DNA of 64,000 nt from Macrostomum lignano. Lineage: Eukaryota. Within the stretch, counting starts at the first letter, position 1, and each line of letters begins with the position of its first letter. The notes below the pieces were generated by a model. That model was not told where the DNA came from. It was given only the letters and a program-made list of their open reading frames with translations, and searched no databases. The DNA lies in NCBI GenBank assembly GCA_002269645.1, contig NIVC01000110.1, forward strand, positions 868,001 through 932,000, in the 5' to 3' direction. This document shows positions 8,050 to 64,000 of the stretch, in pieces. A program made the position numbers and the translations under genes.

Positions 8050-8260
8050 TCTCCTAAACCCTAATTCTAAACCCAACTGAAACACTTTAACTTAACCTGA
8101 TTCCTAAACCGAAACATAAACCTAAACCTAAACCCTAACTCTAACCTCCATTCTTGAACCCTAACCTAAACCTTAACCATACCCTAACCCTAACCCTAAA
8201 CTAAACCTTAACCTAAACCCTAGCCCAAACCTCAGTAAACCTCAACCTACCTAAGCCTAA
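8050..8260. repeat. Degenerate telomere-like (CCCTAA/CCTAAA) interstitial tract
   Basis: Includes ACCCTAACCCTAACCCTAAAC at ~8181 among many variant hexamers. Confidence 0.7.
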
Positions 8261-8342
8261 ACGAACTCATGCCATAAGATTCCTGTCAAGTCATCGTAAG
8301 TACCATCACCTTTTCGCAGAAAATCGTTCGAGCCATTATTGG

Positions 8343-13900: not shown

Positions 13901-14260
13901 GACTTCTTATCTGCCCTCACCCCAAAATTCTTAAACAATCGGGTCGCTAGCAATGTGCATCAAGGCCCTGACTTCTTATCTGCCCTCACCCCAGTTCTTA
14001 AACAATCGGATCGCTAGCAATGTACATCAAGGCCCTGACTTCTTATCTGTCCTCACCCCAGTTCTTAAACAATCGGGTCGCTAGCAATGTACATCAAGGC
14101 CCTGACTTCTTATCTGCCCTCACCCCAGTTCTTAAACAATCGGATCGCTAGCAATGTACATCAAGGCCCTGATTTTTTATCTGCCCTTCTTATCTGGCCC
14201 TGATTTCTTAAGCCATCATCTCGGGTAGCTAGCAGTGTACATCGAAATCCTGATTTCTTA
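10905..14260. repeat. ~67-bp tandem satellite (CCCCAGTTCTTAAACAATCGGGTCGCTAGCAATGTACATCAAGGCCCTGACTTCTTATCTGTCCTCA), ~50 copies
   Basis: Read directly; units vary by 1-2 bp, with a recurring slightly longer variant. Confidence 0.95.
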
Positions 14261-15401: not shown

Positions 15402-26228
<10,827 letters not shown>

Positions 26229-32600: not shown

Positions 32601-32823
32601 CAGACAGTAAGACAGACACAGACAGTAAGACATGCACAGACAGTAAGACAGACAGACAGTAAGACAGACAGACAGTAAGACATGCACAGACAGTAAGACA
32701 GACAGACAGTACGACATGCACAGACAGTAAGACATGCACAGACAGTAGGACAGACACAGACAGTAGGACAGACACAGACAGTAAGACAGACACAGACACA
32801 GACAGTAGGACAGACAGACAGAC

Positions 32824-32862
<39 letters not shown>

Positions 32863-32895
32863 GGCAGACAGACAGGCAGACAGCCACACAGACAC

Positions 32896-32950
<55 letters not shown>

Positions 32951-32951
32951 C

Positions 32952-32982
<31 letters not shown>

Positions 32983-32997
32983 CAGACACACAGACAC

Positions 32998-33060
<63 letters not shown>

Positions 33061-35254
33061 CCACCTTGCAGAGTTTTGCAGCACTACTGAAATGGAAAAC
33101 AGACAGAGGCAGAGAGCAGTAGAAATAATAAATGCTCAAAAGCTCAAACCGCGGCAAAACACGCGATCGGCCAGCCAGAACCGGACTGTGCAATCGAGTC
33201 AAAGCTCAATCAATCAATTTTGCAGTGCACTCTCCTGAGTCTCCAACCCACACCGCCTCTCAGATAGCACTGAAACACTGCAATTTTGAACAAATAGCCG
33301 CTGCGGCAGTTCCCTAGCTGCAAGCTCTGGCACTTTGTAGCCGGGGCACATTAAATACAGAAGTACTTTTTGTGTTGGTTAAAATAAAGTTGCGCTATAT
33401 ATGTCAGTCAGTATCAGTACTGGGTCTGAATCCAAAACTTCAATTTCAGAACCGAAAATCCCTTATTTCAGAACTGGAAATTCCCATATTTTCGAACTGA
33501 AAATCCCAATGATATTCCGATTTCAAAATTCAAATATTACTTTACAAGCCAAAAAACAGAACTTAAAAAGTTAAGTACTTAAAAGAACAACATGCACTTC
33601 AGCTTCATCGTCACTCACGCTCTCCGCCGCATCAACCGAGGCCGGCGCCACTTTCAGCAGCAGCAGCGACCGCTGCTCCAGCTCTGTCTGCAACCGCTCG
33701 AACACCGACACCCGAGTCTTCTCCATCGCAGCGCCGCCGGACCCGCTGTTAGCAACCAGATCAGGAGAAGCTGACAGCGGCACCGAATGGCACAGACCGC
33801 CTGTGGCGCACTCCAGACCCTGCTCAAGTGTCAGCGACTCCAAAGCCCTGTAGGAGCCGAACAACTTAGCTATAGCCTTCTCCAGTAGAGGAGCGAAGTA
33901 CTCACCGGAGTCTGGCGAGTGTGCGAACAGCATTGAGGATGATGGTGATGAGGAGGAGGCTGACCGAGGCAGCCGGTCGTCGATCACGACTCGATACGGT
34001 TCGTCATTAAAGTGCAACCGGAAATGGAATGCGCCAGTGAAACGGACCGGGTCCAGCAGCTCCTGCTCCTGGGAGCGAAGATCCGGCATGGCCTGGATGG
34101 CATGGGGACGTATATCGGCTGATTTTGTTTTTTAAACTTTCGGTTCTGTCTCTCACGTACCTTCTCGGCATACTCCGGCCAGATCAGCAGCGCCGCGGCA
34201 ACTGCCGGCACCCAGCAGGTGCCGAGAGAACCGTGGCAGAGCTCCCGGCTTCGTTTCTCTCGGATGAGCAGGCAGGGCGACTCAGAGATCGTCTGTATAC
34301 GAGTGCGAGGATTGGGGATTGTGTTTTAGATGGGATAATATTGGCAAGTTCAGCAACTCAAATTCGGTAATCAAACTCGGTATTTGAAGGATTTAATGCA
34401 ATGAGGAACAATGGGGATGAGGATATGCAGATATTTAGGATCTAAATCCCATGGTTAAGAATGAGGATCTATAGATTTTTTTATCTAAATCCCATGGTTA
34501 AGAATGAGGATCTACAGATTTTGGGATCTAAATCCCTTGGTTAAGAATGAGGGTCTGCAGGTTTTGGGATCTAAATCCCATGGTTAAGAATGAGGATCTG
34601 CAGGTTTTGGGATCTAAATCCCATGGTTAAGAATGAGGATCTGCAGGTTTTGGGATCTAAATCTCATGGTTAAGAATGAGGATCTGCAGGTTTTGGGATC
34701 TAAATCCCATGGTTAAGAATGAGGATCTGCAGGTTTTGGGATCTAAATCCCATGGTTAAGAATGAGGATCTGCAGATTTTTGGGATCTAAATCCATTGGT
34801 TAAGAATGAGGATCTGCAGGTTTTGGGATCTAAATCCCATGGTTAAGAATGAGGATCTGCAGATTTTGGGATCTAAATCCCATGGTTAAGAATGAGGATC
34901 TGCAGATTTTTGGGATCTAAATCCCATGGTAAAGAATGAGGATCTGCAGATTTTTGGGATCTATATACCAAGGTTAAGAATAAGGATTTGTATACTGATG
35001 GGATCTAAATTTTACAATTTCAATGTAATTTACTAAAAACTAATCTTAAAACAACAATGAAACTATATTACCTTAATCCGATCCCACCGAATCGAGTCGT
35101 CAGGAACATCAACAGAGAACAGTGACTGAGCATTGGCTGGAAATTTGGCATCCTCAAAAACTGTGCCAGAATTTTGGCACTGCTTCTGAATATCCTTGAA
35201 GCGTTGATTTTGAAAATCTGTTGGTGACTCAAGAAGCTTCAGAAATGCCTCCAT
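29677..35254 (-). CDS. CAPN5: Calpain-5/TRA-3-type calpain (CysPc, C2-like domain III, C2), ~695 aa; exons 35254-35072, 34292-34161, 34092-33598, 32576-32097, 31068-30755, 30160-29677
   Basis: Phase-consistent GT-AG junctions. Motifs: FEDAKFPA, ELCHGSLGTCW, VVIDDRLP, LLEKAIAKLFGSY, GLVPCHAY, VRNPAG, WRGPWS, NPQ|Y, LEPGRYILLPCT, and C2 GANPYC...DPEWNE. No penta-EF-hand. The symbol denotes the family; orthology is not proven. Confidence 0.88.
30180..30745. repeat. 23-bp minisatellite (TCTGACAGAGTGATGGTAGAGTG) filling calpain intron 5
   Basis: Read directly. Confidence 0.95.
31140..32070. repeat. 22-bp minisatellite (CCCTTACAGACACACTAACAGA) filling calpain intron 4
   Basis: Read directly. Confidence 0.95.
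32598..33060. repeat. Compound GACA-based microsatellite in calpain intron 3
   Basis: Read directly. Confidence 0.95.
34430..35010. repeat. 43-bp minisatellite (GGATCTAAATCCCATGGTTAAGAATGAGGATCTGCAGGTTTTG), ~13 copies, calpain intron 1
   Basis: Read directly. Confidence 0.93.
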
Positions 35255-45585: not shown

Positions 45586-47346
45586 TCAGCTCGCAGCCTT
45601 GTACAGCAGCCGCTTGGGCGCCCTGGAGTCGGACTGCAGCGCCATCAGTAGGTCCCGCATGCCCACCCGGGTGTGCTTCGGCCGTTTCGAACCGAGAGAG
45701 CCCAGGCCTCCGCCGATGCCGCCGCTGCTGCCGCCACCACCGCTGCCGCCGCCGCCGCCAGGCCCGGCGCCGAAGAACGGCCGCTTCCGGCTGCTGCCGA
45801 AGATGGCCAGAGCGGCGGTCTCGTTTGCCTTGTCCTGCTTGTCCTGCTCGTACTCGGCTTCTTGCAGTTCTCGCGCCTTCTGCTTCAACTTCTGCTGCTC
45901 CGGGTCGTCCATTTTAGCTCGCGACTTCGCCGCCCTAAGCAGCCGTTCGCGCTCCTCCTCGTCTTTGCGCTGCTTCTCCTGCGCGTCGAGGCCGGCCAGG
46001 AATTTCAATCGCCTTGCCGCGTCGTCGGTGCGGGCCAAATAGGGACAGGCGGCCGCCAGCGGCTCAGACCTGTGCTCAGCAGCGGCCGCCGCATGTTCTA
46101 AAATGTCGGTAAGTCGACGCTCAACAGCAGCTGATAGAAAAGCGACGGCGCTGTCGGAGACTTCCAGAAGACCGTCGGATCGGACGAGGTTGATGAGGCG
46201 ACGCTGGAGCGAGCCGGAGCCGAAGAGGACGCCCTGGTCGGGGCACTGGCGAGCTGCTCCCGCGGCAGTTGCAGGCGTCACCGCCGTGGCCGCGGCAGCA
46301 GCCGGTGCAGACGAAGATGAAACCGCAGTGACAGAAGCTGAGCTGACAGCAATTGCTGTAAAGGATGCCTCATTCTCATTCTTGATATTTGCTCCGACAA
46401 ATGATTTGGTATCTGCCAGATTATCGTCTGAAGGGACAGACTGCTTCTGCTGGATAGCTGAACTTGTTGCTGCATGCATAACAGGCACAGCGGAAGAAGT
46501 CGCTGAAGACACCGCAGTAGCAGTTGAGGGCAACGGCGCAGCGGTTGAGGCAGCGACAAGAACAGTGGAGGCCATGGGGCGGCTGTGCTGCATCATTGGC
46601 TGCATGGCTGCTCGAACTACAGTTGGGGCTGGCATTCGCATGAGCTGCTGCTGCTGTTGTTGCGACTGCTGCTGCTGAGGCATTGGCGAGTCCAACCTGA
46701 CCAGGCCCTGTCGATATGCCCGTCGATAATTGGGCAGGTGCAAATTGAGAAAGCCCAGCAACTGATCCGAATTAGTGCTAGAGCCTAGCGCCTCTTTCAA
46801 CTGATTGACAAAGTCTGGCACTGGCAGGCGTTCCTCCACAACATCCCGGATCAGCTGGGTGACCCTCTGCGGTCTCGTGTTGTCTTCGCTATTCTCTCTG
46901 GACAGGCGCTGCAATACGCTGAGAAAGTTTGAGCACTTTGCTATGCTCTCATTGCTGACCCCACCGGCGCTGACTTGAGTAGGCGCTCCGCCAACTGGCA
47001 CGCCGGGACTGGCAGCTACGCCGCAGACGGCAACGTGAGACACCGGCGGTCGAGCCTGCATAGCCGCCTGCGGCATGGAGGCCGCGGCCGCCGGCCTAGC
47101 AATAATCTGTTGGCCGCCATTGCCATGGAACAGCACATACTGCGGCATGCTCGGATGCCTGAGCACAATATTCGGCCCCATGGCCAGCTGTTGCCCGCTG
47201 GGCATTCGAATCACCGAGGCGGCACTGCTAGAAACGCTACCAGCTGCTGACGGCTCCGACGGTCGGACTGACTGAGGCGGAGCCATGTGCACCAGGCGAA
47301 GCTGCGCGGCGCCATTTGGAGCCTGAAAGGCCCGACTGTCGCCCAT
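45586..47346 (-). CDS. TAF4: TFIID subunit TAF4, 586 aa, uninterrupted CDS
   Basis: TAFH/NHR1-like segment (KCSNFLSVLQRL...VTQLIRDVVEERLPVPDFVNQLKEAL), histone fold (LQRRLINLV...AVAFLSAAVERRLTDILE), KQKARELQ...ANETAALAI, and the conserved C-terminus TRVGMRDLLMALQ...LLYKA. First ATG is at 47346; the track ORF starts at a TTG. Confidence 0.92.
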   Translation of the reverse strand: MGDSRAFQAPNGAAQLRLVHMAPPQSVRPSEPSAAGSVSSSAASVIRMPSGQQLAMGPNIVLRHPSMPQYVLFHGNGGQQIIARPAAAASMPQAAMQARPPVSHVAVCGVAASPGVPVGGAPTQVSAGGVSNESIAKCSNFLSVLQRLSRENSEDNTRPQRVTQLIRDVVEERLPVPDFVNQLKEALGSSTNSDQLLGFLNLHLPNYRRAYRQGLVRLDSPMPQQQQSQQQQQQLMRMPAPTVVRAAMQPMMQHSRPMASTVLVAASTAAPLPSTATAVSSATSSAVPVMHAATSSAIQQKQSVPSDDNLADTKSFVGANIKNENEASFTAIAVSSASVTAVSSSSAPAAAAATAVTPATAAGAARQCPDQGVLFGSGSLQRRLINLVRSDGLLEVSDSAVAFLSAAVERRLTDILEHAAAAAEHRSEPLAAACPYLARTDDAARRLKFLAGLDAQEKQRKDEEERERLLRAAKSRAKMDDPEQQKLKQKARELQEAEYEQDKQDKANETAALAIFGSSRKRPFFGAGPGGGGGSGGGGSSGGIGGGLGSLGSKRPKHTRVGMRDLLMALQSDSRAPKRLLYKAAS

Positions 47347-48190
47347 GGTCTGAGAAACCTGCTTGCTGCTCTGTCCGAGTTTCTGTCCTCTGCTGTGCCT
47401 AGCCAAGCTCAACTGTCAGTTGCATTGTTTGTTTTTAAGCAGATGAAAATGGAAAAGATAATTTTAGATGAACTTTGCTTTATTTCACTAATGCATTGAC
47501 TTACCCAAAATGCTTATATATTGAAAACTTTAAACAAAAAGTAAAAATGCAAGCATATATTTCAGATTTACACCTGCTTTGTTTTTTGGTAACACACTTT
47601 GAATTTTATGCATCTATAAGTTCAATTTTTCTTATCCCTAATGACTCAATTTAGGTTTCTTAAGCACTAGATTCAGCATGATTTAGCATCTTAGGTATCA
47701 ATTTAGGATGTCAAATAAAAAGTAGGATCTTATCTAGCAATGGTTATATGTTTAAAAAAGAAAAAGATAACAACTATTATAATCCTCTAGTTTTAATAGA
47801 CAGTTATTAAATTTAAACTACTTTAATGAAATCACACTTCAATGGAAACTTTTATAGAAATTATTGCATCTAAGATAATGTAAGAAAAATCATTTACAAC
47901 TTAGATTTTTTATTGGCAGACACTTTTATATCTGAATACTATAATTAATAAAGTTTGTTTATCATTTGCATAATTATATAATATAGTTATCACAAATTTA
48001 ATATTAGCCATTATCAAAATAATATAAAGCCAACAAAATTATATAATTTAGATGATTAACTTGAATAATTCAAACCTATCTATTATTATCTATAAATTAG
48101 CTTTCACCTTGGCATTCCTATCACAATACTGTGTCAATTTCAATTGTCGTGTTGTTGGTGGCATTTGGTCTATCATATAAAATTGTCGGC

Positions 48191-50982: not shown

Positions 50983-52530
50983 CAGGGTGACCGCGCTCCA
51001 GTAACTTTTTTCTTCCCTGACTAAACTAAATTTTCCCTGACACACTAAAAGTAATAGAAGAAGCTCAGTGATAGTTGTGCACAATAATTTTATTGCAACA
51101 AACTGTTGCGCATTAAAAAGTCAGCAATGTTGAGATTAATTTAATTTGAATTGAAGTTGAAACAGCGCATGTATTGGCAATAATTTGTTTGAATTAATAA
51201 TGAAAAATTAATGCACCGGAAACTGACCACAAAAAAACGTAGTGTTTGATAAAAAATTGCATGAAAAATATCAAGTACTAACTTTTATTGTATGTGGCGC
51301 ACAGTAAAACAAAGTTAAGAGATGTAGCACTGTAGTTAAAATTGAGTTCAATGAGGAATCGTACCTTCAAGTGCTACAATCTCTTTCTCTACCTTCTCCA
51401 CTTCTTCCTTTTTCTGTTGTGCAGCACGACGCAGTGCATTTGACTTCACGAGTAGGCTCATGTTTGAATCCGTCTCACATTGGTACACGAGGCTATCCGC
51501 ATCTTTGGTGAGAACTGCAACATCAAGCAGGAGCTTCTTTTGCTTCGACTGGAGCTCCAGCACCGTTGCATCCTTCCTTTTCCTTGATTCCTCGTATTTC
51601 CGATGAGATGCTTCTGCTCGCTGCTGCTCCAACATGGCCCTGTACCTACTCCTGGCACTTCTCACACTCTTCAACATCTCCTCGGTAACTTTCGCGATGA
51701 TTTCAGCGGCAGTCTTTCCCTTTTGCCACTCGTACACAAGTCGGAGAGAACGAATGCTCAATCCCTGAAGATTTGGTTCTAGGCACTCTTTGTTGACACT
51801 GAAGCCGCGCTCAACAGCAGCATTCCCATGGAAGGTTGTCAGAACCATCTTCACAATGATCTGCAAATTATTGGTACTCGTTGAATCAGTGAAGAGGGAA
51901 GCAAAGAGGACATCAAGTCGGTCTGACTTATAGTCGAATTGAGACAGCTGAAATCGATGCTCACGAACTGTAACAGTTCGAAACTGGGTGAACTCGGACT
52001 TTGCAGCGTCAGCTTCCTGTGCAGTGATGCGTCCCTTAGTGTAGGCTTCCAGGACAAGCGCATCAAAATCTGCTTGAGCCGGTGATGAGGATGGTGGGTC
52101 ACTATCCAATTCTGCCACCAGCACAGAAAAACAAAATATACACCTTTCTATTAATGGCCTGGTTAATATATTATCATAGTATGGACTATATATTTTACTG
52201 TCAGTGTGATTAGCACAGCAATTATAGATTAGCAATATGTAGGCCTACAAGCCCATAAATTATTCATTTAAGAACAAGTATCTGCCAATTTCAAATAAAT
52301 ACCAGCTTTTAAAAACAAAAATACATGGAACAAACAAAACAGATTTACTATTCGAGCTACTTAGTGCTATCGATTAGCCGCTTTCTTGTCTCACAATTTT
52401 TTTCTTCAATTTTCTAATTTACTTTCAAATTTTCCCTGACTTCCTAAGAATTTCCCTGACTTTCCCTGACTTTCCAGACCACATTTTTTTCCCTGACTTT
52501 CCCTGACTTTCCCTGACCGCGGTCACCCTG
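50983..52530 (-). mobile_element. Internally deleted hAT-superfamily DNA transposon with a 5-bp TSD
   Basis: TIRs CAGGGTGACCGCG and CGCGGTCACCCTG. TCAAA lies immediately on both sides. Subterminal TTCCCTGAC repeats; carries a transposase 3' fragment. Confidence 0.8.
51348..52120 (-). pseudogene. hAT-like transposase C-terminal exon (dimerisation/catalytic Glu region)
   Basis: ...IIVKMVLTTFHGNAAVERGFSVNKECL...RLVYEW...MLKSVRSARSRY... The HGxAxVERGFS motif carries the third catalytic residue. A candidate acceptor GTGGCAG lies near 52113. No N-terminal part is present. Confidence 0.75.
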
Positions 52531-53280: not shown

Positions 53281-53379
53281 AATTAAAAGTAGTAGTAGTA
53301 GTAGGCCTAAGTTAAACGTATCTGTTTCCCCATAGATATTCGTATTGATATTCAATTTCTAACAAATGCAACAAAATAA

Positions 53380-54995
53380 ACCTACTTGTACAGCTCGGAT
53401 TTGCATGAAAATTTACAGAAAAATTATTACACACAAAACAAACACCTCTGTGAAACTTCAAGTCCATCAGACCACGCAAAGCGGAATGGCAAGAGTTTTA
53501 AAGGTGCTCGTATTTATAATGCATTGTATATGCGCACAGTGTATAACATGTATGCCCATTTGCAACACTTGTACAGCTCGGATTTGCATGAAAATTTACA
53601 GAAAAATTATTACACACAAAACAAACACCTCTGTGAAACTTCAAGTCCATCAGACCACGCAAAGCGGAATGGCAAGAGTTTTAAAGGTGCTCGTATTTAT
53701 AATGCATTGTATATGCGCACAGTGTATAACATGTATGCCCATTTGCAACACTTGTACAGCTCGGATTTGCATGAAAATTTACAGAAAAATTATTACACAC
53801 AAAACAAACACCTCTGTGAAACTTCAAGTCCATCAGACCACGCAAAGCGGAATGGCAAGAGTTTTAAAGGTGCTCGTATTTATAATGCATTGTATATGCG
53901 CACAGTGTATAACATGTATGCCCATTTGCAACACTTGTACAGCTCGGATTTGCATGAAAATTTACAGAAAAATTATTACACACAAAACAAACACCTCTGT
54001 GAAACTTCAAGTCCATCAGACCACGCAAAGCGGAATGGCAAGAGTTTTAAAGGTGCTCGTATTTATAATGCATTGTATATGCGCACAGTGTATAACATGT
54101 ATGCCCATTTGCAACACTTGTACAGCTCGGATTTGCATGAAAATTTACAGAAAAATTATTACACACAAAACAAACACCTCTGTGAAACTTCAAGTCCATC
54201 AGACCACGCAAAGCGGAATGGCAAGAGTTTTAAAGGTGCTCGTATTTATAATGCATTGTATATGCGCACAGTGTATAACATGTATGCTCATTTGCAACAC
54301 TTGTACAGCTCGGATTTGCATGAAAATTTACAGAAAAATTATTACACACAAAACAAACATCTTTGTGAAACTTCAAGTCCATCAGACCACGCAAAGCGGA
54401 ATGGCAAGAGTTTTAAAGGTGCTCGTATTTATAATGCATTGTATATGCGCACAGTGTATAACATGTATGCTCATTTGCAACACTTGTACAGCTCGGATTT
54501 GCATGAAAATTTACAGAAAAATTATTACACACAAAACAAACACCTCTGTGAAACTTCAAGTCCATCAGACCACGCAAAGCGGAATGGCAAGAGTTTTAAA
54601 GGTGCTCGTATTTATAATGCATTGTATATGCGCACAGTGTATAACATGTATGCCCATTTGCAACACTTGTACAGCTCGGATTTGCATGAAAATTTACAGA
54701 AAAATTATTACACACAAAACAAACACCTCTGTGAAACTTCAAGTCCATCAGACCACGCAAAGCGGAATGGCAAGAGTTTTAAAGGTGCTCGTATTTATAA
54801 TGCATTGTATATGCGCACAGTGTATAACATGTATGCCCATTTGCAACACTTGTACAGCTCGGATTTGCATGAAAATTTACAGAAAAATTATTACACACAA
54901 AACAAACACCTCTGTGAAACTTCAAGTCCATCAGACCACGCAAAGCGGAATGGCAAGAGTTTTAAAGGTGCTCGTATTTATAATGCATTGTATAT
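53380..54995 (+). repeat. Left arm: 183-bp tandem unit, ~8.8 copies
   Basis: GTACAGCTCGG recurs at 53388, 53571, 53754 and so on, every 183 bp. Confidence 0.97.
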
Positions 54996-55201
54996 GAATT
55001 CCAATCCCAGCCGGAACTACTTTTGCTTGTGTTCCAGAATATGAAGTTATACTCAAACACAGAACTTGTTAATAATTATAGGATAGAGTTAAAAATAAAA
55101 GTGGAGTATAAGTTCGTATAAAATTAGAATTTGAGGCAAGCATTAATCACATGTTGGCTTGTGGTGTTGCCCAAGAATGTCAGGCAATGTCTGTCTTAAA
55201 A

Positions 55202-56298
55202 CAAGTATTGGCAAACTCCGGCCTCTGTCCCTGCGCCTCCCTACGTCCCTAGATTCCTTTGAAACTTCAGTCAATTCTCTACTGTTTCCTCTCTTCTCTA
55301 TCGTCTCTCATCCTTTCCCTCCCATCTCATCTCATCTCTTTTTTCCTCTCTCCTTTATTTCTTCCTTCTCCCCGATCTTTTCTTGTCTCTCCTTATCTTT
55401 CTTTGGTTTTTCTACTCTCTTCTCTCTCATTGCTTTATCATCTCTCCTTTCTCTTCTTATTTTCTGCTCTCTTATCTCTTCTTATTTATCTCTGCTCTCT
55501 ACTCTCTATTCTCTCTCCCCTCTGTATAAATTCTCACTCCTCACTCTCCCCTCTTTCTTGACACTTCCCACTTCTCTCCTCTCTCCGATCTCTTCTCTCT
55601 ACTCTCCCCCGATCTGCTCTCGTCTCTCATCTCTTCTATCATCTCTTTACTCTCTCCTCTCTCGTCTCAATCCTCTGTAATATATCTTTCCTGCCTCATA
55701 CTCTCTCTCATTATCTGATCTGTAGTCTCCTTTTATCATCTCTCCTCTCTCAACTTCCTCCACTACTCTCACCTCTCCTCTCCATCTCTCTCTCCCTCGC
55801 TCTTATCTCTCCACTCATCTCTCTGTTCTCTGCTCTCCCATCTCTCATCTCCTTACTATATTCTCTCCCCTCTCCGTTCTTCTCTTTCCTCTCCTCTCCC
55901 CTGTCTCTCCCTTTCCCCTCTCTCCCTTTTGCTCTCGATTCTCTCCCATCTTTTCTCCTCTTTCCTCACTCCACTTCTCTCTCTCCCTTTGTCTCTCCTC
56001 TCTGCTTTCGTGTCTGTAATAGATTCTCTCTTATCACTTCTATCTCCGCTGTTCTCTATTCTACCATCTGTCGTCTGTTCACTCTCGTATCTGCTCTCTC
56101 GATCATCTCTACTCTCTATTCTGTTATCTTTACTCTTATATGTTCTCAAATCTCTCCTCTGTACTATTTTCTTTCCCCTCTTATGACTCCTCTCTTCCAA
56201 TCTCTTCTCTCCTCTCTCTCCACTCTCTAATCTCTAATCTCTTCTCTCTCATCTCTACTTTCTCCTCTTCCCTCTCTCTCCCATCTCATCTATCTCCT

Positions 56299-56353
<55 letters not shown>

Positions 56354-56470
56354 CTCTCTCTGTCTCATCTCATCTCTCTCATCTCTACTTTCTACTCTCT
56401 CTTCTCCTCATTTCATCTCTCTTCTTTCTCCTCCAATTTGCAGCCCTGAGAGGAATTTGTGTATCTCCAG
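55202..56470 (+). mobile_element. hAT-MITE-family copy with a ~1.2-kb CT tract, nested inside the Mutator element
   Basis: Starts CAAGTATTGGCAAACTCCGGCC...TCCTTTGAAACTT, compared with CAGGGGTCGCCAAACTCCGGCC...TCCTTTGAAACTT at 27045. CT-rich from 55270 to 56440; the right end is degenerate. Confidence 0.6.
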
Positions 56471-57168
56471 CTCCACTGCACTCCAGCAGTCTAACAACCT
56501 ATATTGCGTAGCTACTTTCTTATATCTATCTTCAGTTCATGTGCACTCGTCCTGTTTACTGTTTTTTGCCTCTCTGTCCAGCTATCTCTCTCCCTTGCTG
56601 CATTCTGATTGGCTATTTATTATCGTCTCTTTCTTTAGTCGCGCACCCACCCCTATTTTTCTATCAGCACACTCCCCACCCCTCTCTTTTAGTTTAATCT
56701 CTGATAAATGTAGACCTGCACGCTTGGTCCCTGCGTCCCACTTACTAGTTGCTTCTTTAATTTCAATTCTAAGTAAATTTTCTCATTTTCTCTTGAACGA
56801 ATACTAGATTCTATATAAGCAATAACTTAACTGACCATTGAATTTTTCAAATATGTGGACTCGTGGACTCGTATTTTTCTTCGTAGTACTGACCACAATT
56901 CTAGTAACTTTCTGTTTTGGACTGCCATCAAAAGAGCAGGTATTTGCAGTTTCATAACTTTCTGAATGCATGCAATGTCGAAACTGGATCTTTATCCGTA
57001 ATTTTAAATGGGTTATTCCTATTTTAGGCTCAATCTAAAGTCAGTACAGCCAGTAGAATTTATCCTCCTCCAACTGGCTTTCGTCACTCTACACCACTTT
57101 ATGTGTTCTTATGTCGGGCACTCAAAATTCGAAACCGACTGCGATCGCGGGTATATCTTTGGGGTCTA

Positions 57169-58203
57169 ATGAATAGGTCGCTACATGTACCCCAGTCAAC
57201 TGAGACGACTGATGCTGCAGGACGTTCCAACAGTGCATGTAGCCAGAAGAGCAAGAAAAATAAACCGACTGGAAAAGTCCAAGGAAAGAAAGCTCAGAGA
57301 TCGAAAAATAGACGTGCATATAATACAGCTGGCCAAAAACATTCAACGTTAAACGGGAGACGTCAGGCTGATAAAACGATTTATGAACCCAGCGACCCTA
57401 TAGTAGAAAACGACGATGGACAGAAAAGCGAAGATTTTTGCAACGCAGAGAATAGAGAAGAGAGAACAACGCGTGTACAAGTAGATTTGAATGCTACAAG
57501 CTCATCACAATCGACGTCAAACGAACAACCACCAGAAGTTGAGGAAAGTTCTGATGAAACTGGGGAGAATCGGATCGAACTATCGGAGAGTGATATCTGC
57601 AAAATTAACCTATCGGTGGAAGATAGTCAATCTGGACCAAAGTATACGTTTTCAAAAAGTTTTCTTAATGAAGCAGTTTGCCGTGCTATGCGACAAGTCG
57701 CTACGTGCTGTTTGAGGATGACGGGCTATAATCACATTCGAAAGCAGAATTCAAGAAAAAGTAAGCAGAATTTTTGGACAATTAGAGCGGAATGCAAAAT
57801 TGAAGGATGCAGAAGAAATTACGCTTTAATAATGAGAAGACCACCACGTGTTGACGGAACAACATGGTCTTGGGAGGTTATTATCACGGGAAGGTTAAAC
57901 CATCAAGATGCTACGGCTAGTTGTTTTCGTAGAACGACCGAATCAGAAAAACGTGAAATTTACGACGATATAAAAGAGGCCGGTGCCGTTGAAGCATTCA
58001 GAAGACGCTTTCTTGCGATCGAAAATTTACCATTCATTCTGTCGTGCAACTTTGATGCGTGCAAAACCAAAACTGTGATGTATAATTTAAAAAGTAAAAT
58101 GGAGAAAGACGAGAGGTTACACTCTGTTCTTTTTGTTGAGCTTGGAGGTCTACAAGACATTTTTAACTTCGATATCCGCATCCGATTTTTCCTGGAGTCA
58201 TAA
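57169..58203 (+). CDS. Mutator transposase N-terminal part (acidic linker plus putative WRKY/GCM1/FAR1-like DNA-binding domain)
   Basis: ATG at 57169 is in frame with the track ORF. The segment ...FWTIRAECKIEGCRRNY...WEVIITGRLNHQD... shows the Cx4C...H pattern of MULE DNA-binding domains. Confidence 0.7.
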   Translation: MNRSLHVPQSTETTDAAGRSNSACSQKSKKNKPTGKVQGKKAQRSKNRRAYNTAGQKHSTLNGRRQADKTIYEPSDPIVENDDGQKSEDFCNAENREERTTRVQVDLNATSSSQSTSNEQPPEVEESSDETGENRIELSESDICKINLSVEDSQSGPKYTFSKSFLNEAVCRAMRQVATCCLRMTGYNHIRKQNSRKSKQNFWTIRAECKIEGCRRNYALIMRRPPRVDGTTWSWEVIITGRLNHQDATASCFRRTTESEKREIYDDIKEAGAVEAFRRRFLAIENLPFILSCNFDACKTKTVMYNLKSKMEKDERLHSVLFVELGGLQDIFNFDIRIRFFLES

Positions 58204-59771
58204 TGGAGCGTAGTTTAGATCCACTACGTGTTGTATTATTGTCCAACCTTGAAATACAGCTTCTTAGAGCAATTATGTCAGCTCGTACTCCAACAGTGCT
58301 GCATATCGACGCTACTGGCTCGTTAATAGAAAAAAACTGTTCACCTCATCCTGTTCTACTCTATTCTGTCATCACAACTGCTACTGATTCTGTTCCATCG
58401 TCGCCAGTTGGGAATATGATTACAGACTCCCATAACGTTGCATCCATTTCTCACTTTCTAAAACTCCTCCGCCATAGAATTCTGCACTGTGTAAACTCAC
58501 CTTTTTCTGTTGACCTAAATATTCTTTTTATTTCCGACTTTTCATGGGCGCAAATTCATTCATGCTTAGACTTCCACCACACGGACGTGACAACGTACAT
58601 CCAAATGCATTACAATTACTTTATTACGGACACCCCTAGCGAGATTCAATATGGCGTTTTTCTGTGTAGCAATCATATTATAAAGTCAATTTCGGACCAC
58701 TGCAAAAAACACTCCTTGAACCAGCGAAGCCGTCAGCTATTTTTGAAGTTATTTTCTTTAATTCAGTATTCCAGTACGCAAAAACTATCCGTCAACTTCA
58801 TCATGGACACGCTTATTATATTTGGATCTCCGTATGCCGAGCAAACCGTTGCTGCTAGAACTAGGGTAGCAAATTTTCTGAGAGATGGCCATGTTCCAGA
58901 GTATTCCGAATCAATCAACAAAGACTCATTTATACTTCAAGACAAGGATCATGCAAGTATGAACGCGGAAGGTGACGCGATACTGAAAAATTCTCCATAC
59001 TACGAATACTTTAAAAAGGAATTTACCACAATTCAAAATACTCTCGCGCATAAAACCGGTCATTCGCATCTGACAGATAATGAATTCTACAACCCTCGAT
59101 TGATAAACTTTTTCTTGCTTAGATACCTGTCCATCCTCCCTCTATGGGCTATATTTACATGGAATCATTTGATTGCTAAAAATTCAAAGTCTTTTTACTC
59201 AAATGCTCATGTGGAGAGTTGGTTTTCTTCTGTGAAAAGTCGATTTAACACCAAGTCCAGGCTGAGTACCTTCGTAGAGAATTATGTACCCTTTGTACTT
59301 CGTAGAGTTTCAGAGTGCACCATCTCGAGCAAAGTACCTGCTCCAAGTTTTTGCAGAAAAAGGAAGTCATCAATCTCAGAAGAAGCTGCAACTGAAGGTT
59401 GGCAAAAAAGGTCGAGAAATAGCAAGCGTTCAAGATACTCAGATACTAGTAGCAATCAGTATTTTGCTAATGTCGCCGATCCTGACGAAACGGAAAAGAG
59501 TAGCAGTCAGTCCCAACAGAGCAACCCAAAATCAAAACTTCCGGGATGCACAGCTGGTAGGAACAGACCCAATAAAAATTCCAGTCAAAATGGAACCGCA
59601 GATAACAGTAGAAGCAGGTGGCAAAGCAAGAGGAGCACGCGGCAGAAAGGAAGAACGGTGCAAAGCGATAATAGCCAGATTCTCTTCACCCTTCCTGGCT
59701 CTGGAACGGATATTCCCGTAACGCAAGAGCATCGTCAAAGTTTGTTGGGAAGCAACCTGTTAGACTACACG
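58203..59771 (+). CDS. Mutator DDE transposase core; coding segment ends at a splice donor
   Basis: VLHIDATGS (D1), FISDFSWAQIHS (D2), FLCSNH (CxxH), SNAHVESWFSSVK (E). Ends LLDYT|GTAAGT. Confidence 0.85.
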
Positions 59772-59913
59772 GTAAGTATTTTCATAAATACTTACTTACT
59801 TACAATAAATACTTAAGTAAGTATACGTAAATACTTACAATAGAAAATTCAGTTGACTTATGACCTATTTTCACCATTATCTTTTCCTGTCCCTCTTGCA
59901 TTACTCGCGATAG

Positions 59914-60780
59914 ATTTTATTGGCCTATTGCACTGCTATCACATCGAACAACGCCCAAAGGATTGTAATAAGTGAGGGCGACTTTTACTACATATTGAAT
60001 CTATCAGGAGATGAGTTCAACGATGGAGTCCAGAACTTGCTGAGAAGAACTCTCGGATGGAAGGCAAGTTCTGTTAATGAAACAATAATGTCGTTTTTGA
60101 TGCAAAATAAATTTGTACACTTGTAGTGAATTCTCAATGAAAATCTTACGCATGCACCAATTTGAGGTATAAAATTATTTGCTCTCTTGATGTTGCAGGG
60201 CCTGAATCAAATAATCGTGCCTATTTTAAACAGCGGGCATTTTTACTTGATCGTTATTTGCGGCGTTGAACGAAAGGTCTTTGTGCTGGATTCGATTCGG
60301 CGTAATGCGCAAGAGAAGCAAGAGTTTCATGTTCTAATTCGCAAATGGAAGTGAGTACAATAGTTTGTGTACATGTCCAGAGAATAAATAAAAGTGAACT
60401 TAAGTACTGATGTGGCAAATCTGTAAAATTTCTGTTAACTTTCTAGCCGCATATTGGCTTCCGATGGAATAATGGCATTTGTTGACCAAAGCGCTCCGGT
60501 ATTCACCAGCAGCACATCGAAGCCATATGAGCTGGCCACAATGTCGAGAACAATGCAATCTGATGGTCATAGTTGCGGAGTGTTTGTATGCCTGTACGCT
60601 AGGGCATTAGCTCTTGGTTCTGGTCTCCGGTTCAAGAACAATCCGACGGCTCTCGGAAGATACAGACAGTATATCTGGAATGTGATCCAGGCCTACAGCT
60701 ATGGAGGAACGCAGGAAGAGTGCTCAGCCTGTAGCAACACAGAACCTGACGCTTCGGGCGTTAGTCGTCGCATAAATTGG
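59914..60780 (+). CDS. Ulp1/SENP (C48) cysteine protease domain of the transposase gene; exons 59914-60063, 60199-60350, 60447-60780
   Basis: LLDYT|ILLAYC...GWK|GLNQIIVPILNSGHFYLIVI...VFVLDS...QSDGHSCGVFVCLYA contains His, Asp, the oxyanion Gln and Cys. Junctions are phase-consistent; the second intron has a GC donor (AAG|GCAAGT). Confidence 0.85.
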
Positions 60781-60962
60781 GTAAAATACGAGTAATTTTC
60801 CTTTTTTTATTTTTTTAACTACGAATTTCACTTTTGCCAAGCAGATTGCTTAAAGCAGTCATACAGATTGAACTCCAGCTTAAGATGCAGTCGATCGAAT
60901 ATGCAGTCGAGTTGTGCTTACAGCATAATGCGGTTAATTTTCGCTCACCCCTTCATTTCTAG

Positions 60963-61067
60963 ATTGAATGTCCCTCCTGTCTTCGTTGGTATCACACAGA
61001 ATGCGTCGAAGGGTCGACCGATCCAGGTTTTTGTTGCGCAACGTGCAAAGACATGTTTTCGCATTAG
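60963..61067 (+). CDS. Terminal exon completing a PHD finger
   Basis: CSAC...RINW|IECPSCLRWYHTECVEGSTDPGFCCATCKDMFSH* is a C4-H-C3 PHD pattern. Acceptor CATTTCTAG; not shown in the ORF track. Confidence 0.85.
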   Translation: MECPSCLRWYHTECVEGSTDPGFCCATCKDMFSH

Positions 61068-62469
61068 TTACTTGATTTTTACACAACTGTACATGTACGT
61101 GAATGTCGCCATTACTCGTAAATGGATCTCTCCAGTTCCTTATTTTTGGAGCAAGAGGTTCTCTAGATCTGGTTCTGAGTGCACCTGTGGCAGTCGCGAC
61201 GGCCAATCTTCCATGTACAGAAGGGTCGTGAGGCTGCTGCTTTTTGCTGCTAATTTTCTGACTAGAAAAATATGTATGGCCGCCCTCCCATCCCGTTGTT
61301 TTTGTTTGTTCGCCCGCTTTTTTCATCCCCCTATGCAGATGTTCGATTACGAGCCATGGAATGCAATATAATCAATTTATGCTAAGGACCACTCGAATTG
61401 GGGATCGACCGACATGGACATGAACAGGCGAACAACCATCCCACTCGAACAAAACAGGGGGCTCTAACCGCGGCCCATGCAGGTGTTCGATATTCTTTCA
61501 GAGAGTGGAGCAGCGCTCATTTAAATAGTTCAGTTTGCAACTTTCATGGGACTTCTCAGGGTTTTCAATCGGGCCTCTTCTACACTAAAAGTAGGACCTC
61601 TCGCCACAGTGGATCTTTGTGGCTCCGATTTAATCGAGAGCTTGACAACAGCGTGATGACTACTAAGAGTAATATTATTAGGGAACACATGCTCGATCTA
61701 ATGGTTGGTATAGAGCGATTATGAGCCGAACTGTTCAGTACATTTTGTATGTAAATCTATTTAAGTATTCATCTTTGTTGTAATTTAAATTCCTGTTATA
61801 ACCTTTTTATTGGTTACATGCATTTCATCAAAACTGTCCACGCTTTTATTGATGTTATTAGAAGTACCACGCGTGCATATACATAAATGCACATGTACGT
61901 AACATGTAATACTAAATACATCAAAAGTTCTCAGCGACTGTCACTTTGAAAATTTCGAAACAAGTTTGTATTTTTAACCCAAGCTGCATATCCCAACGGT
62001 TGCATAGAGTGGTGTAGAAATTAGGCCAAATGTTGCGTTATTTTTGTGCTAGGCTTGCGTGCCAAGCCAAGAGGAGTCTACAATTGGCACCTGCGCTTCA
62101 CAGGGCTGGCTTATACATGTACATGCAATATTTGGCTCGCGTTAGTAATTCAGACTTATGACTTATTACGCAGCTACGATCAGAGACTGAATTGGTATAG
62201 GGTTAACAACAGAAATGTTTGTGGACAATAGCTATTTGCATTAATAGCAATGAAAATTACATTCTGCTAATTGAATTTTACATTTGCAACGTGAGTGGAA
62301 TACTCACCAAAACAGTGCCGACATAATTCGCAGTCACGCATGCATGAGCTGGGTACATGTAACATGTATAATATACGGGCCTATATGCAGGTATTGCACT
62401 TCGCGTTGCATCGCGCTTACGAGCTAGCAAGCTATATGTGCATCATATAAATATACGATATACGAGCAC

Positions 62470-63140
62470 ATTAAAAAAACTCTTGCCATTCCGCTTTGCG
62501 TGGTCTGATGGACTTGAAGTTTCACAAAGATGTTTGTTTTGTGTGTAATAATTTTTCTGTAAATTTTCATGCAAATCCGAGCTGTACAAGTATTGCAAAT
62601 GAGCATACATGTTATACACTGTGCGCATATACAATGCATTATAAATACGAGCACCTTTAAAACTCTTGCCATTCCGCTTTGCGTGGTCTGATGGACTTGA
62701 AGTTTCACAAAGATGTTTGTTTTGTGTGTAATAATTTTTCTGTAAATTTTCATGCAAATCCGAGCTGTACAAGTATTGCAAATGAGCATACATGTTATAC
62801 ACTGTGCGCATATACAATGCATTATAAATACGAGCACCTTTAAAACTCTTGCCATTCCGCTTTGCGTGGTCTGATGGACTTGAAGTTTCACAGAGGTGTT
62901 TGTTTTGTGTGTAATAATTTTTCTGTAAATTTTCATGCAAATCCGAGCTGTACAAGTATTGCAAATGAGCATACATGTTATACACTGTGCGCATATACAA
63001 TGCATTATAAATACGAGCACCTTTAAAACTCTTGCCATTCCGCTTTGCGTGGTCTGATGGACTTGAAGTTTCACAGAGGTGTTTGTTTTGTGTGTAATAA
63101 TTTTTCTGTAAATTTTCAAGCAAATCCGAGCTGTACAAGT
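62470..63140 (-). repeat. Right arm: 183-bp tandem unit, ~3.6 copies, inverted relative to the left arm
   Basis: CCGAGCTGTAC recurs every 183 bp; reverse complement of the left-arm unit. Confidence 0.97.
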
Positions 63141-64000
63141 AGGTTTATTTTGTTGCATTTGTTAGAAATTGAATATCAATACGAATATCTATGGGGAAAC
63201 AGATACGTCTAAGTTAAGTTTAGTAGTAAAAAAACTAGTTAGAAAAAGATCTTTAAATTTCTGTCGGAAATCATATTGCTAAAACAAATAAAAAAATCTA
63301 TTAATTAGTTTGAAATCCTAAATGAGATTATTTTATCTGAAAAATAGCAGAAAGATTTCTTTCTAAATTTAACCTTTATTAAACATAAAATTATGGCTTA
63401 AAGTAAATTACAAAAAATTTGAAAAACATTTTCAGTCTGGTCGCGGGCCGCAGGGTTGCCAGTGCGCCAGGCAGTGAGTGTCATGTCACGGGCTGCCCAT
63501 GCCGACCAGCGCGCGAGCTGCTGCTGGTGCAACTATGAGACAACTAGATTATCCTAATGTTACAATGACTGAAGGCAGTGATCGGTGTGGCATGGTGTGT
63601 TCGCGTGGTTTTTGCTTAATTTCATCGAGTTATATGGGTATCATGAATTATGTCCTGTCTCCTGTCGAGTGTTGACTGTTGACCACAGGCGTAGAGCAGA
63701 AAATATAGTCAAATTTGCACATATTCTGACTTATTTATTGACAATGATGCTTAATACTGTCAACTGATGGCCTTATGCCCCTATTCAATTTAACAACAAC
63801 TTAGGGCCTAGGCTAGGCCAAAGTGTAATTTCTTTTTTTCTTATTTTAAGACTTTGAGCCTCTTCATATCGCCGATTCGAAAAACGGAACCGATTCCGAA
63901 CCGGTTCGATGCTCTTCATATCGATGGTTCGAAAAACAGAATCAGTTCCAGAACATGGTTCTAGTTCTAGAATATGGTTCGAGAAATTTTCTCAAACCAT

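What the first reader, a model, noticed from the sequence alone, without database searches (positions are those of the whole stretch)
53316..63208. Nearly intact 9.9-kb Mutator/foldback transposon encoding transposase, SUMO-type protease and PHD finger: candidate anti-silencing module
Seen in sequence: a perfect 9-bp TSD, inverted arms of 183-bp tandem units, and a 5-segment spliced gene. The gene reads putative DNA-binding domain, MULE DDE core (D, D, CxxH, E present), Ulp1/C48 protease (H, D, Q, C intact), then a C4HC3 PHD finger. The last exon and one protease exon are invisible in the ORF track. Established: 9-bp TSDs typify Mutator; metazoan Rehavkus/FB-NOF elements have repeat-built TIRs and Ulp1/PHD cargo; plant KAONASHI MULEs carry Ulp1; SUMOylation is needed for piRNA-guided heterochromatin silencing in Drosophila; PHD fingers read H3 tails. 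Inference: one polypeptide could bind its own arm arrays, read chromatin and remove SUMO locally. The architecture class is known, but this family and such a function may be undescribed.
Basis: partly seen in the sequence, partly recalled or inferred. Interest (0 to 1): 0.85.

Follow-up and report, generated by a model that had tools for sequence, protein, structure and literature searches.

The report
Rehavkus-type foldback transposon in flatworm
This is a recently inserted 9.9-kb jumping gene of the known Rehavkus (Mutator-related) kind in the flatworm Macrostomum lignano; its transposase is fused to a SUMO-type protease and a PHD finger, a known layout, and this copy's reading frame is broken by one base.

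Summary
The structural observation holds. A 9,893-bp element (53316-63208) is flanked by a perfect 9-bp duplication, CTAAGTTAA. Each end has a 68-bp terminal sequence followed by inverted arrays of a 183-bp unit (8.8 and 3.7 copies).

One multi-exon gene encodes four parts: an N-terminal CCCH zinc-finger-like domain, a DDE transposase, a Ulp1/SENP-like C48 protease and a C-terminal PHD finger.

There is one correction. The large first coding segment is not one open frame. One base is missing at 58180-58181, and a TAA follows at 58201-58203. The two closest relatives read straight through this point. This copy is therefore disabled, unless the missing base is an assembly error.

The host is Macrostomum lignano. 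The transposase core aligns end to end with Repbase Rehavkus transposases (E 1e-18). Its modelled fold best matches an IS256-family transposase. No Pfam MULE model hits it.

The protease-PHD tail is conserved in many relatives. Other relatives carry an OTU or UCH protease instead. Ulp1+PHD in animal Mutator transposases was published in 2010.

Verdict: a new member of a known kind. The anti-silencing idea is untested; plant VANDAL elements whose VANC gene carries a captured Ulp1 domain offer a precedent. In this copy, Leu and Phe replace the two tryptophans of the SUMO-protease tunnel.

The parts
53307..53315 (.). Left target-site duplication CTAAGTTAA
53316..53383 (+). Left terminal unique sequence (68 bp); exact inverted copy of 63141-63208
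53384..54996 (+). Left subterminal array of the 183-bp unit: 8 full units plus 149 nt
54997..56852 (+). Internal 5' non-coding region. It includes a CT-rich low-complexity tract (about 55270-56440) that resembles other CT/GA tracts of the window. No Pfam hit in its ORFs.
56853..56939 (+). Possible short 5' exon (ATG, 29 codons, GT donor; acceptor at 57027). Low confidence: no homolog or transcript support.
57169..58179 (+). Coding segment 1a (frame 1; first ATG at 57169, frame open from 57028). It holds a low-complexity N-terminus and a CCCH zinc-finger-like domain from about 57595. The family-invariant residues are C 57709, C 57793, C 57808 and H 57901. This is the putative DNA-binding domain.
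58180..58181 (+). Frameshift site: two bases where relatives have one codon (Asp in P0001). The upstream frame then ends at TAA 58201-58203.
58182..59771 (+). Coding segment 1b (frame 0). It holds the DDE transposase core (D 58308, D 58536, C 58665, H 58674, E 59214), a basic disordered linker, and the start of the C48 domain (Leu 59757 at the first Trp position).
59914..60063 (+). C48 protease exon, followed by a GC-AG intron
60199..60350 (+). C48 protease exon with catalytic His 60238 (followed by Phe, not Trp) and Asp 60289
60447..60780 (+). C48 protease exon with Gln 60556 and catalytic Cys 60574, plus the first Cys pair of the PHD finger (60721, 60730)
60963..61067 (+). Last exon: the rest of the PHD finger (C 60969, C 60978, H 60993, C 61002, C 61035, C 61044) and the TAG stop
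61068..62459 (+). Internal 3' non-coding region; no recognisable gene on either strand
62460..63140 (-). Right subterminal array of the 183-bp unit: 3 full units plus about 116 nt, inverted relative to the left array
63141..63208 (-). Right terminal unique sequence (68 bp)
63209..63217 (.). Right target-site duplication CTAAGTTAA

Best explanation
This is a young, structurally complete, autonomous-type DNA transposon of the Rehavkus group (Mutator superfamily in the wide sense). It is inserted in the genome of the flatworm Macrostomum lignano.

Shown:
- Cut-and-paste insertion left a 9-bp duplication.
- Each end has a 68-bp terminal sequence followed by an array of nearly identical 183-bp units.
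- One gene encodes a single long protein with a CCCH zinc-finger-like N-terminal domain, a DDE catalytic core with an all-helical insertion, a disordered basic linker, a Ulp1/SENP-like cysteine protease and a PHD finger.
- The protease-PHD tail is conserved in many distant relatives of the transposase.
- In this copy one base is missing at 58180-58181, so the full protein cannot be made.

Inferred:
- The N-terminal domain binds sites in the ends, and the arrays provide many such sites.
- In intact family members the tail acts as a chromatin-tethered isopeptidase that removes SUMO (or a related modifier) near the element or the transpososome, and this helps the element.
- Which step it helps (escape from SUMO-dependent silencing, control of repair, or choice of target) is open.
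- This copy could still be moved in trans by an intact copy, if one exists.
For: - Element boundaries: duplication, inverted ends and arrays.
- Host identity: the neighbouring TAF4-like ORF is 99% identical to a M. lignano protein.
- Transposase family size: 624 relatives at E<=1e-3 in 1.84 billion representative proteins.
- Rehavkus homology: end-to-end alignment to Repbase Rehavkus-1_HR, -1_TC and -3_TC DDE domains at E 1e-18 to 1e-15.
- Published Rehavkus traits: 9-bp duplication, 5.9-18.5 kb length, PHD finger and subterminal tandem repeats.
- Catalytic columns: D/D/C..H/E are invariant or nearly so in 43 relatives.
- Fold: the AlphaFold model has pTM 0.71, places the D, D and E on the expected strands and helix, and best matches the IS256-family transposase ISCth4 (family link from PMC7780238).
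- C48: above the Pfam cut-off in the window protein. The family profile hits SENP1 at E 4e-31 over its full length.
- PHD: the family profile hits solved PHD fingers at E 4e-13.
- Tail distribution: found in 12 of the 18 representatives long enough to hold one (more than 650 aa after the first catalytic Asp) and in 32 of the retrieved sequences, some of which belong to the same cluster. Of 43 long relatives, Pfam detects PHD in 12, C48 in 10, OTU in 6 and UCH in 1. This argues for removal of ubiquitin-like modifiers as the selected activity.
Against: - No Pfam MULE or Transposase_mut hit for the window protein or for 43 relatives.
- The Foldseek match is modest: E 1e-4, TM 0.2-0.3 on a query that is one-third disordered.
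- The frameshift breaks the gene, and no other copy was found in the window or in the protein collections. Current activity of the family in this genome is therefore unknown.
- This copy has Leu and Phe at the two tunnel Trp positions of SENPs. Four close relatives keep the first Trp.
- No transcript evidence for any splice junction.
- The DNA-binding role of the N-terminal domain rests on a conserved Cys/His pattern only; there is no PDB or Pfam match.
Confidence: 0.85

Rival explanations
1. Anti-silencing module. The PHD finger docks the protein on histone H3 tails at the element. The protease then strips SUMO from local silencing factors and blocks piRNA- or heterochromatin-based repression of the element.
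For: - The tail is conserved across the family and is closest to SUMO-specific SENP1/2/5 and Ulp1.
- The PHD is genuine at profile level.
- Plant precedent: VANDAL elements whose VANC gene carries a captured Ulp1 domain induce hypomethylation of related elements and so escape silencing, though the function of the Ulp1 domain itself is unknown (PMC13317346).
- M. lignano has a piRNA pathway that silences transposons (PMC4604429).
- That SUMO is needed for piRNA-guided silencing in Drosophila comes from my own knowledge and was not checked here.
Against: - There is no functional data of any kind.
- SUMO dependence of silencing in flatworms is unknown.
- This copy is frameshifted and lacks both tunnel tryptophans.
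- Only two aromatic positions of a possible histone-binding cage are visible, so the histone mark read, if any, cannot be inferred.
- Relatives that carry OTU or UCH instead suggest that ubiquitin, not only SUMO, can be the target.
Confidence: 0.2
2. The protease tail supports the transposition reaction itself. It removes SUMO or ubiquitin from the transposase or from host repair and replication factors at the excision and insertion sites. The PHD finger guides insertion to particular chromatin.
For: - Proposed for Ulp1/OTU tails of Ginger1 and Mutator transposases by Bao et al. 2010.
- C48, OTU and UCH domains are interchangeable among relatives.
- The tail is covalently fused to the transposase, so it travels with the transpososome.
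Against: - There is no direct evidence.
- With only one insertion site available, nothing can be said about target preference.
Confidence: 0.3
3. The C48 domain is a self-processing protease. It cuts the long precursor to release the transposase from the tail, as adenain-type and some viral OTU proteases do for their polyproteins.
For: - C48 is in the same clan as adenain, which the family profile hits weakly (E 3e-4).
- A long disordered linker (pLDDT below 50 from residue 415 of the DDE exon) separates the core from the tail and could hold a cleavage site.
Against: - The profile is far closer to SENP1/2 and Ulp1 (E 1e-25 to 4e-31) than to adenain.
- I did not look for a Gly-Gly-type cleavage motif.
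- Self-processing does not explain the fused PHD finger.
Confidence: 0.08
4. The copy is simply a dead relic. The frameshift and the Trp-to-Leu change are decay, and nothing in this locus functions today.
For: - Frameshift at 58180-58181 followed by a stop at 58201.
- Leu at a position where close relatives keep Trp.
- No near-identical protein in 15 billion collected proteins.
Against: - The duplication is perfect and the arms are 98-99% identical.
- There are no other stops in about 3.3 kb of coding sequence, and every other catalytic residue is intact.
- A single-base deletion is also a typical long-read assembly error. That is my general knowledge; I could not check how this assembly was made.
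Confidence: 0.4

Closest known systems
Rehavkus group of DNA transposons (Repbase: Rehavkus-1_HR, -1_TC, -3_TC, -2_NVi, -1_DY, Rehavkus1_AP)
   Same: - 9-bp target-site duplication and length in the 5.9-18.5 kb range.
- Inverted ends holding subterminal tandem repeats.
- A single transposase gene with a C-terminal PHD finger.
- The DDE core aligns end to end: 24-25% identity over about 320 aa, E 1e-18 to 1e-15.
   Different: - The host is a flatworm. Dupeyron et al. 2019 list only arthropods and annelids.
- The papers I could read mention the PHD finger and the minisatellite but not a C48 protease in Rehavkus.
- Identity to the described members is low, so this is a separate family within the group.
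Mutator transposases with Ulp1 and PHD domains from Hydra and lancelet (Bao, Kapitonov and Jurka 2010, Fig. 1e)
   Same: Animal Mutator-type transposases carrying a Ulp1 protease domain, with a PHD finger, at the C-terminus.
Canonical MULEs (MuDR, Jittery, Phantom and others) and bacterial IS256
   Same: - D..D..C(2)H..E signature.
- 8-11 bp duplications.
- RNase H-like core with a helical insertion.
- The best structural match is the IS256-family transposase ISCth4.
   Different: - No Pfam MULE or Transposase_mut hit.
- Rehavkus is used as the outgroup to MULEs in published trees.
Plant KAONASHI / VANDAL elements whose VANC gene carries a captured Ulp1 domain
   Same: Mutator-superfamily elements that carry a Ulp1-type protease domain. 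These VANDALs induce hypomethylation of related elements and so escape silencing.
   Different: - In plants the Ulp1 domain was captured from a host gene and sits in a separate accessory gene, VANC. The elements lack terminal inverted repeats and act on DNA methylation.
- Here the protease is fused to the transposase and followed by a PHD finger, and the element has long foldback ends.
Ginger1 transposons
   Same: The transposase has a C-terminal Ulp1 or OTU protease, one member also has a PHD finger, and the genes hold introns including a GC-AG one.
   Different: The Ginger1 catalytic core is a Gypsy-type integrase. Pfam gave no integrase-type hit for the window protein.
Foldback elements with tandem repeats in the arms (Drosophila FB, Tetris, Galileo)
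   Same: - Long inverted arms built of tandem units.
- 8-10 bp duplications in Tetris.
- Repeats proposed as extra transposase-binding sites.
   Different: [quoted passage not shown]
- FB-NOF sequences were not compared here.

Membership tests
Rehavkus group | 9-bp target-site duplication | tested here: met
   CTAAGTTAA on both sides, abutting the inverted ends
Rehavkus group | Long inverted termini containing subterminal tandem (minisatellite) repeats | tested here: met
   183-bp units, 8.8 copies on the left and 3.7 on the right, inverted
Rehavkus group | Transposase DDE domain homologous to Repbase Rehavkus transposases | tested here: met
   blastp against six Rehavkus DDE domains taken from the supplement of PMC6446971: E 1e-18 (1_HR), 1e-15 (1_TC, 3_TC) and 5e-11 (1_DY), near full length. 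The matches to 1_AP and 2_NVi are weak.
Rehavkus group | PHD finger in the transposase | tested here: met
   C4HC3 pattern present. The family profile hits solved PHD fingers at E 4e-13. The window protein alone is below the Pfam cut-off: 14.3 against 24 bits.
Rehavkus group | Placement inside the Rehavkus clade in a phylogeny that includes canonical MULEs | not tested
   No tree was built. Support is limited to pairwise and profile similarity and the absence of MULE profile hits.
Mutator superfamily (MULE / IS256) | DDE triad with a C/D(2)H motif after the second D | tested here: met
   D43, D119, C162, H165 and E345 of the DDE exon, in columns invariant or nearly invariant in 43 relatives
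Mutator superfamily (MULE / IS256) | Match to Pfam MULE (PF10551) or Transposase_mut (PF00872) | tested here: not met
   No hit for the window protein at E<=10 nor for 43 relatives at E<=0.01
Mutator superfamily (MULE / IS256) | Fold of the catalytic core closest to an IS256/MULE-type transposase | tested here: inconclusive
   The top five Foldseek PDB hits are ISCth4 (IS256 family) at E 1e-4 to 6e-4 and probability 0.99-1.0. TM-scores are only 0.2-0.3, and Hermes and RAG1 follow closely.
Peptidase C48 (Ulp1/SENP) | Profile match above the curated threshold | tested here: met
   PF02902 at 34.8 bits against a cut-off of 20.7. The family profile hits SENP1 at E 4e-31 and Ulp1 at 1e-25.
Peptidase C48 (Ulp1/SENP) | Catalytic His, Asp and Cys, and the oxyanion Gln | tested here: met
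   H 60238, D 60289, Q 60556 and C 60574, aligned to the SENP2 residues
Peptidase C48 (Ulp1/SENP) | Two tryptophans forming the Gly-Gly tunnel (their role is from my own knowledge of SENP structures) | tested here: not met
   Leu at 59757 and Phe at 60241. Most relatives have Trp at both positions; the closest clade has Trp at the first and Phe at the second.
Peptidase C48 (Ulp1/SENP) | SUMO isopeptidase activity | not testable with these tools
   Needs a biochemical assay
PHD finger | Binding of a histone H3 tail | not testable with these tools
   Only the zinc ligands and two aromatic positions (Trp before the third Cys, Trp before the His) can be read from the sequence
Ginger1 | Gypsy-integrase-type catalytic core | tested here: not met
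   No integrase-type Pfam hit. The core is Rehavkus-like.
Drosophila FB-NOF | Homology of the encoded protein to NOF | not tested
No NOF sequence was at hand.

The most novel reading that the evidence does not exclude
Rehavkus-type transposases of animals carry, as an ancestral and selected part of the enzyme, a histone-docked SUMO or ubiquitin isopeptidase. It acts at the element's own chromatin to undo modifier-dependent silencing. This would be an animal counterpart, arrived at independently, of the plant VANDAL elements that escape silencing and carry a Ulp1 domain. The swapping of C48, OTU and UCH domains among relatives would then reflect an arms race with host silencing. Macrostomum lignano, where transgenesis and RNAi exist, could serve to test this.
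Probability: 0.15. Interest if true: 0.8.

Novelty: new member of a known kind. Interest (0 to 1): 0.35.

Why it matters
As an annotation it is useful but ordinary. It appears to add a flatworm host to a little-studied transposon group that one review lists only from arthropods and annelids. It also gives a clean, complete reference copy with exact ends.

The wider point comes from the relatives rather than from this copy. Protease tails that remove ubiquitin-like modifiers (C48, OTU, UCH), usually with a PHD finger, are a recurrent and conserved part of these transposases, and nobody knows what they do.

If an intact copy exists in M. lignano, the species' transgenesis and RNAi tools would allow a direct test of whether such a tail counters silencing, assists repair or guides insertion.

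Tried and rejected
- A 71-nt intron (58148-58218) to bridge the two frames. Rejected because P0001, P0002 and L003 conserve the residues it would remove.
- An upstream 29-codon exon (56853-56939) with a hydrophobic peptide. Kept only as a low-confidence possibility, because no homolog covers it.
- A word-indexed search of 5.8 billion proteins with the spliced protein found nothing. The exhaustive HMMER search with the DDE exon then found 624 relatives.
- An exact-sequence look-up of the 537-aa ORF found no contig.
- Sequence search of the PDB with the whole protein gave only a marginal SENP2 hit at E 0.15. Family profiles were needed.
- A profile of the N-terminal domain found nothing in the PDB, and Pfam found nothing either.
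- A motif shared between the 68-bp end and the 183-bp unit: only 7-mers are shared, and a 14-of-18 match seen by eye is expected by chance.
- A constrained array period (183 bp here, 186 bp in L001, with unrelated sequences). Probably coincidence, since a Tribolium Rehavkus satellite works out at about 154 bp.
- A second gene inside the element: none found.
- The CT-rich tract as a functional part of the element. Rejected as generic low-complexity sequence that also occurs at 19.3, 27.1 and 42.3 kb.

Full report
**1. What is in the sequence**

The element runs from 53316 to 63208 (9,893 bp). The nonamer CTAAGTTAA lies immediately outside both ends, at 53307-53315 and 63209-63217. The first 89 nt of the two ends are perfectly complementary. 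For a fixed pair of sites a 9-bp match has a probability of about 4e-6.

Each end has a 68-bp terminal sequence followed by an array of a 183-bp unit:
- The left array runs 53384-54996, with 8 full units plus 149 nt.
- The right array runs 62460-63140, with 3 full units plus about 116 nt, in inverted orientation.
- Full units differ from the consensus at 0-4 positions.

Neither the terminal sequence nor the unit occurs elsewhere in the 64-kb window. The perfect duplication and near-identical arms point to a recent insertion.

**2. The gene**

Four small exons follow the large coding segment: 59914-60063, 60199-60350, 60447-60780 and 60963-61067. Their splice sites are canonical, except that the intron after 60063 is GC-AG. 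The resulting protein aligns in a single piece with a 1,212-aa relative, P0002, from residue 159 to 1101. It aligns likewise with P0004. This supports every junction, although no transcript data were available.

The large first segment is not one open frame:
- Frame 1 is open to 58179.
- Two bases (58180-58181) stand where relatives have one codon.
- The homologous reading continues in frame 0 from 58182.
- In frame 1 a TAA follows at 58201-58203.

The nearest relative, P0001, is 51% identical. Its contig L003 reads 417 aa in one frame across this point. An intron I first drew here would delete residues that the family conserves, so I rejected it.

This copy therefore carries a one-base deletion. 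It could be a real mutation or an assembly error, and I cannot tell which. No other in-frame stop occurs in the coding sequence. The start codon is uncertain. The first ATG of the open frame is at 57169, and a possible short upstream exon at 56853-56939 has no support.

**3. Domains**

*Transposase.* An exhaustive HMMER search with the DDE exon found 624 relatives at E<=1e-3. In an alignment with 43 long relatives the columns T45, G46, D119, C162, H165, N300 and E345 are invariant, and D43 is nearly so. This is the D..D..C(2)H..E pattern.

The AlphaFold model has mean pLDDT 74 and pTM 0.71. It places D43 on the first strand, D119 just after the fourth strand and E345 on a helix, with an all-helical insertion between them. 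Its best PDB matches are the ISCth4 transposase structures (E 1e-4, probability 1.0), followed by Hermes and RAG1. ISCth4 belongs to the IS256 family, whose transposases resemble those of eukaryotic Mutator-like elements (PMC7780238). The TM-scores are low (0.2-0.3), so this is supportive rather than decisive. No Pfam MULE or Transposase_mut model hits the window protein or any of the 43 relatives.

*Rehavkus.* The supplement of Dupeyron et al. 2019 holds the DDE domains of six Repbase Rehavkus elements. The window's DDE exon aligns with them nearly end to end:

| Rehavkus element | E-value | Detail |
|---|---|---|
| Rehavkus-1_HR | 1e-18 | 24.5% identity over 322 aa |
| Rehavkus-1_TC | 1e-15 | |
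| Rehavkus-3_TC | 1e-15 | |
| Rehavkus-1_DY | 5e-11 | |

(All.)

[quoted passage not shown] All fit this element.

*N-terminal domain.* Thirteen family members share an invariant C...C-x4-C...H pattern and an SRK motif. In the window the pattern falls at 57709, 57793, 57808 and 57901. It has no Pfam or PDB match. A DNA-binding role is inference from the pattern and position only.

*Protease.* Pfam Peptidase_C48 scores 34.8 bits against a cut-off of 20.7. His, Asp, Gln and Cys align with the catalytic residues of SENP2. A profile of 15 family tails gives these PDB hits:

| Target | E-value |
|---|---|
| SENP1 | 4e-31 (full length) |
| SENP2 | 4e-27 |
| Ulp1 | 1e-25 |
| ChlaDub2 | 4e-10 |
| SENP8 | 2e-8 |
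| adenain | 3e-4 |

'SUMO-type' is therefore justified for the family. However, most relatives keep two tryptophans that, from my knowledge of SENP structures, form the tunnel for the Gly-Gly tail. The window copy has Leu (59757) at the first position and Phe (60241) at the second. Its closest clade keeps Trp at the first.

*PHD.* The window protein alone is below the Pfam cut-off (14.3 against 24 bits). The C4HC3 ligands are nevertheless invariant in 13 family members. Their profile hits 167 solved PHD sequences, the best being DPF3 at E 4e-13. Which histone state it reads cannot be told from the sequence.

**4. The tail across the family**

- A local iterative search found the homologous C48(-PHD) tail in 32 of the retrieved sequences, some of which belong to the same cluster.
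- It is present in 12 of the 18 representatives long enough to hold one, meaning more than 650 aa after the first catalytic Asp.
- Among 43 long relatives, Pfam sees PHD in 12, C48 in 10, OTU in 6 and UCH in 1.
- Six relatives have OTU at the C-terminus in place of C48.
- Two relatives (P0073, P0094) have OTU at the N-terminus as well as C48-PHD at the C-terminus.

The recurrent presence of one or another protease for ubiquitin-like modifiers argues that removing such modifiers is the selected activity. It argues against cleavage of the element's own protein as the main role.

**5. Host and context**

The neighbouring ORF at 45589-47412 (minus strand) is 99% identical to a Macrostomum lignano TAF4-like protein. 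The window also holds calpain and EF-hand exons and is crowded with minisatellites.

The element contains no second recognisable gene. Its CT-rich tract (about 55270-56440) is generic low-complexity sequence also found at three other places in the window.

I found no paper describing Rehavkus or MULEs in M. lignano. I could not search Repbase or Dfam.

**6. How it most likely works**

Shown: a cut-and-paste element of the Rehavkus group, with exact ends and a single fused gene that is broken in this copy.

Inferred:
- The N-terminal zinc-finger-like domain binds the ends.
- The 183-bp arrays multiply binding sites, as proposed for other foldback elements.
- In intact relatives the tail works as a chromatin-docked isopeptidase.

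I rate the benefit it brings as follows:

| Proposed role of the tail | Probability |
|---|---|
| Support of the transposition or repair reaction, or target choice | about 0.3 |
| Countering silencing | about 0.2 |
| Self-processing of the precursor protein | below 0.1 |
| Unknown | remainder |

The plant VANDAL case shows that anti-silencing by a Ulp1-bearing Mutator relative is not far-fetched. Nothing here tests it.

**7. Novelty and score**

The architecture class is known. Rehavkus has been in Repbase since 2008, and Ulp1 plus PHD in animal Mutator transposases was published in 2010.

Three things may be new:
- the flatworm host;
- a divergent family, about 25% identical to the described cores;
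- the observation that C48, OTU and UCH tails alternate, and sometimes co-occur, among Rehavkus-like transposases.

I file this as a new member of a known kind, with interest 0.35.

Noticed in passing
window 1-53300: The window comes from Macrostomum lignano and is unusually rich in minisatellites, with 35 TRF rows scoring 150 or more. Examples: 10923-14187 (67 bp x 48), 15675-18774 (23 bp x 136) and 22502-25252 (25 bp x 112). Several arrays create long spurious ORFs.
   Followed up: partly
window 45586-47412 (-): Single-exon TAF4-like gene (TAFH and TAF4 domains), 99% identical to M. lignano BOX15_Mlig031439g1. This identifies the host.
   Followed up: yes
window 32007-34089 (-); 4136-5029 (-); 6820-7323 (-): Host gene pieces: calpain (Peptidase_C2) exons and two EF-hand ORFs. 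The ORF at 4136-5029 runs in frame into a 24-bp minisatellite (4702-5023).
   Followed up: partly
window 51348-52235 (-): A 295-aa ORF 1 kb left of the insertion, in an AT-rich stretch (GC 0.33-0.37). It has no Pfam hit and may be the remnant of another mobile element.
   Followed up: partly
window 8103-8262: Interstitial tract of telomere-like CCCTAA / CCTAAA repeats.
   Followed up: no
relatives P0024, P0021, P0025, P0017, P0140, P0101; P0073, P0094: Among Rehavkus-like transposases, six have an OTU protease at the C-terminus in place of C48. Two have OTU at the N-terminus together with C48-PHD at the C-terminus. This differs from Ginger1, where OTU and Ulp1 are reported never to co-occur.
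   Followed up: partly
L001 14208-17143: The locus of relative P0002 (31% identical over the transposase exon) has about 15 units of a 186-bp tandem repeat just 3' of the gene, all in one orientation. No inverted copy lies within 10 kb upstream. The unit is unrelated in sequence to the 183-bp unit here. The similar period is probably coincidence, since a Tribolium Rehavkus satellite is about 154 bp.
   Followed up: partly
L002 (Logan SRR23617196, 3,784 nt): Relative P0004 (995 aa, same four-domain layout) is encoded without introns on a short contig that ends in a simple (TAGG)n run. It could be a transcript, which would mean such fused proteins are expressed somewhere. The organism is unknown.
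   Followed up: no
window 60064-60198: The intron after the exon 59914-60063 has a GC donor (AAG|GCAAGT). No GT alternative keeps the frame. A GC-AG intron was also reported in a Ginger1 transposase gene.
   Followed up: partly
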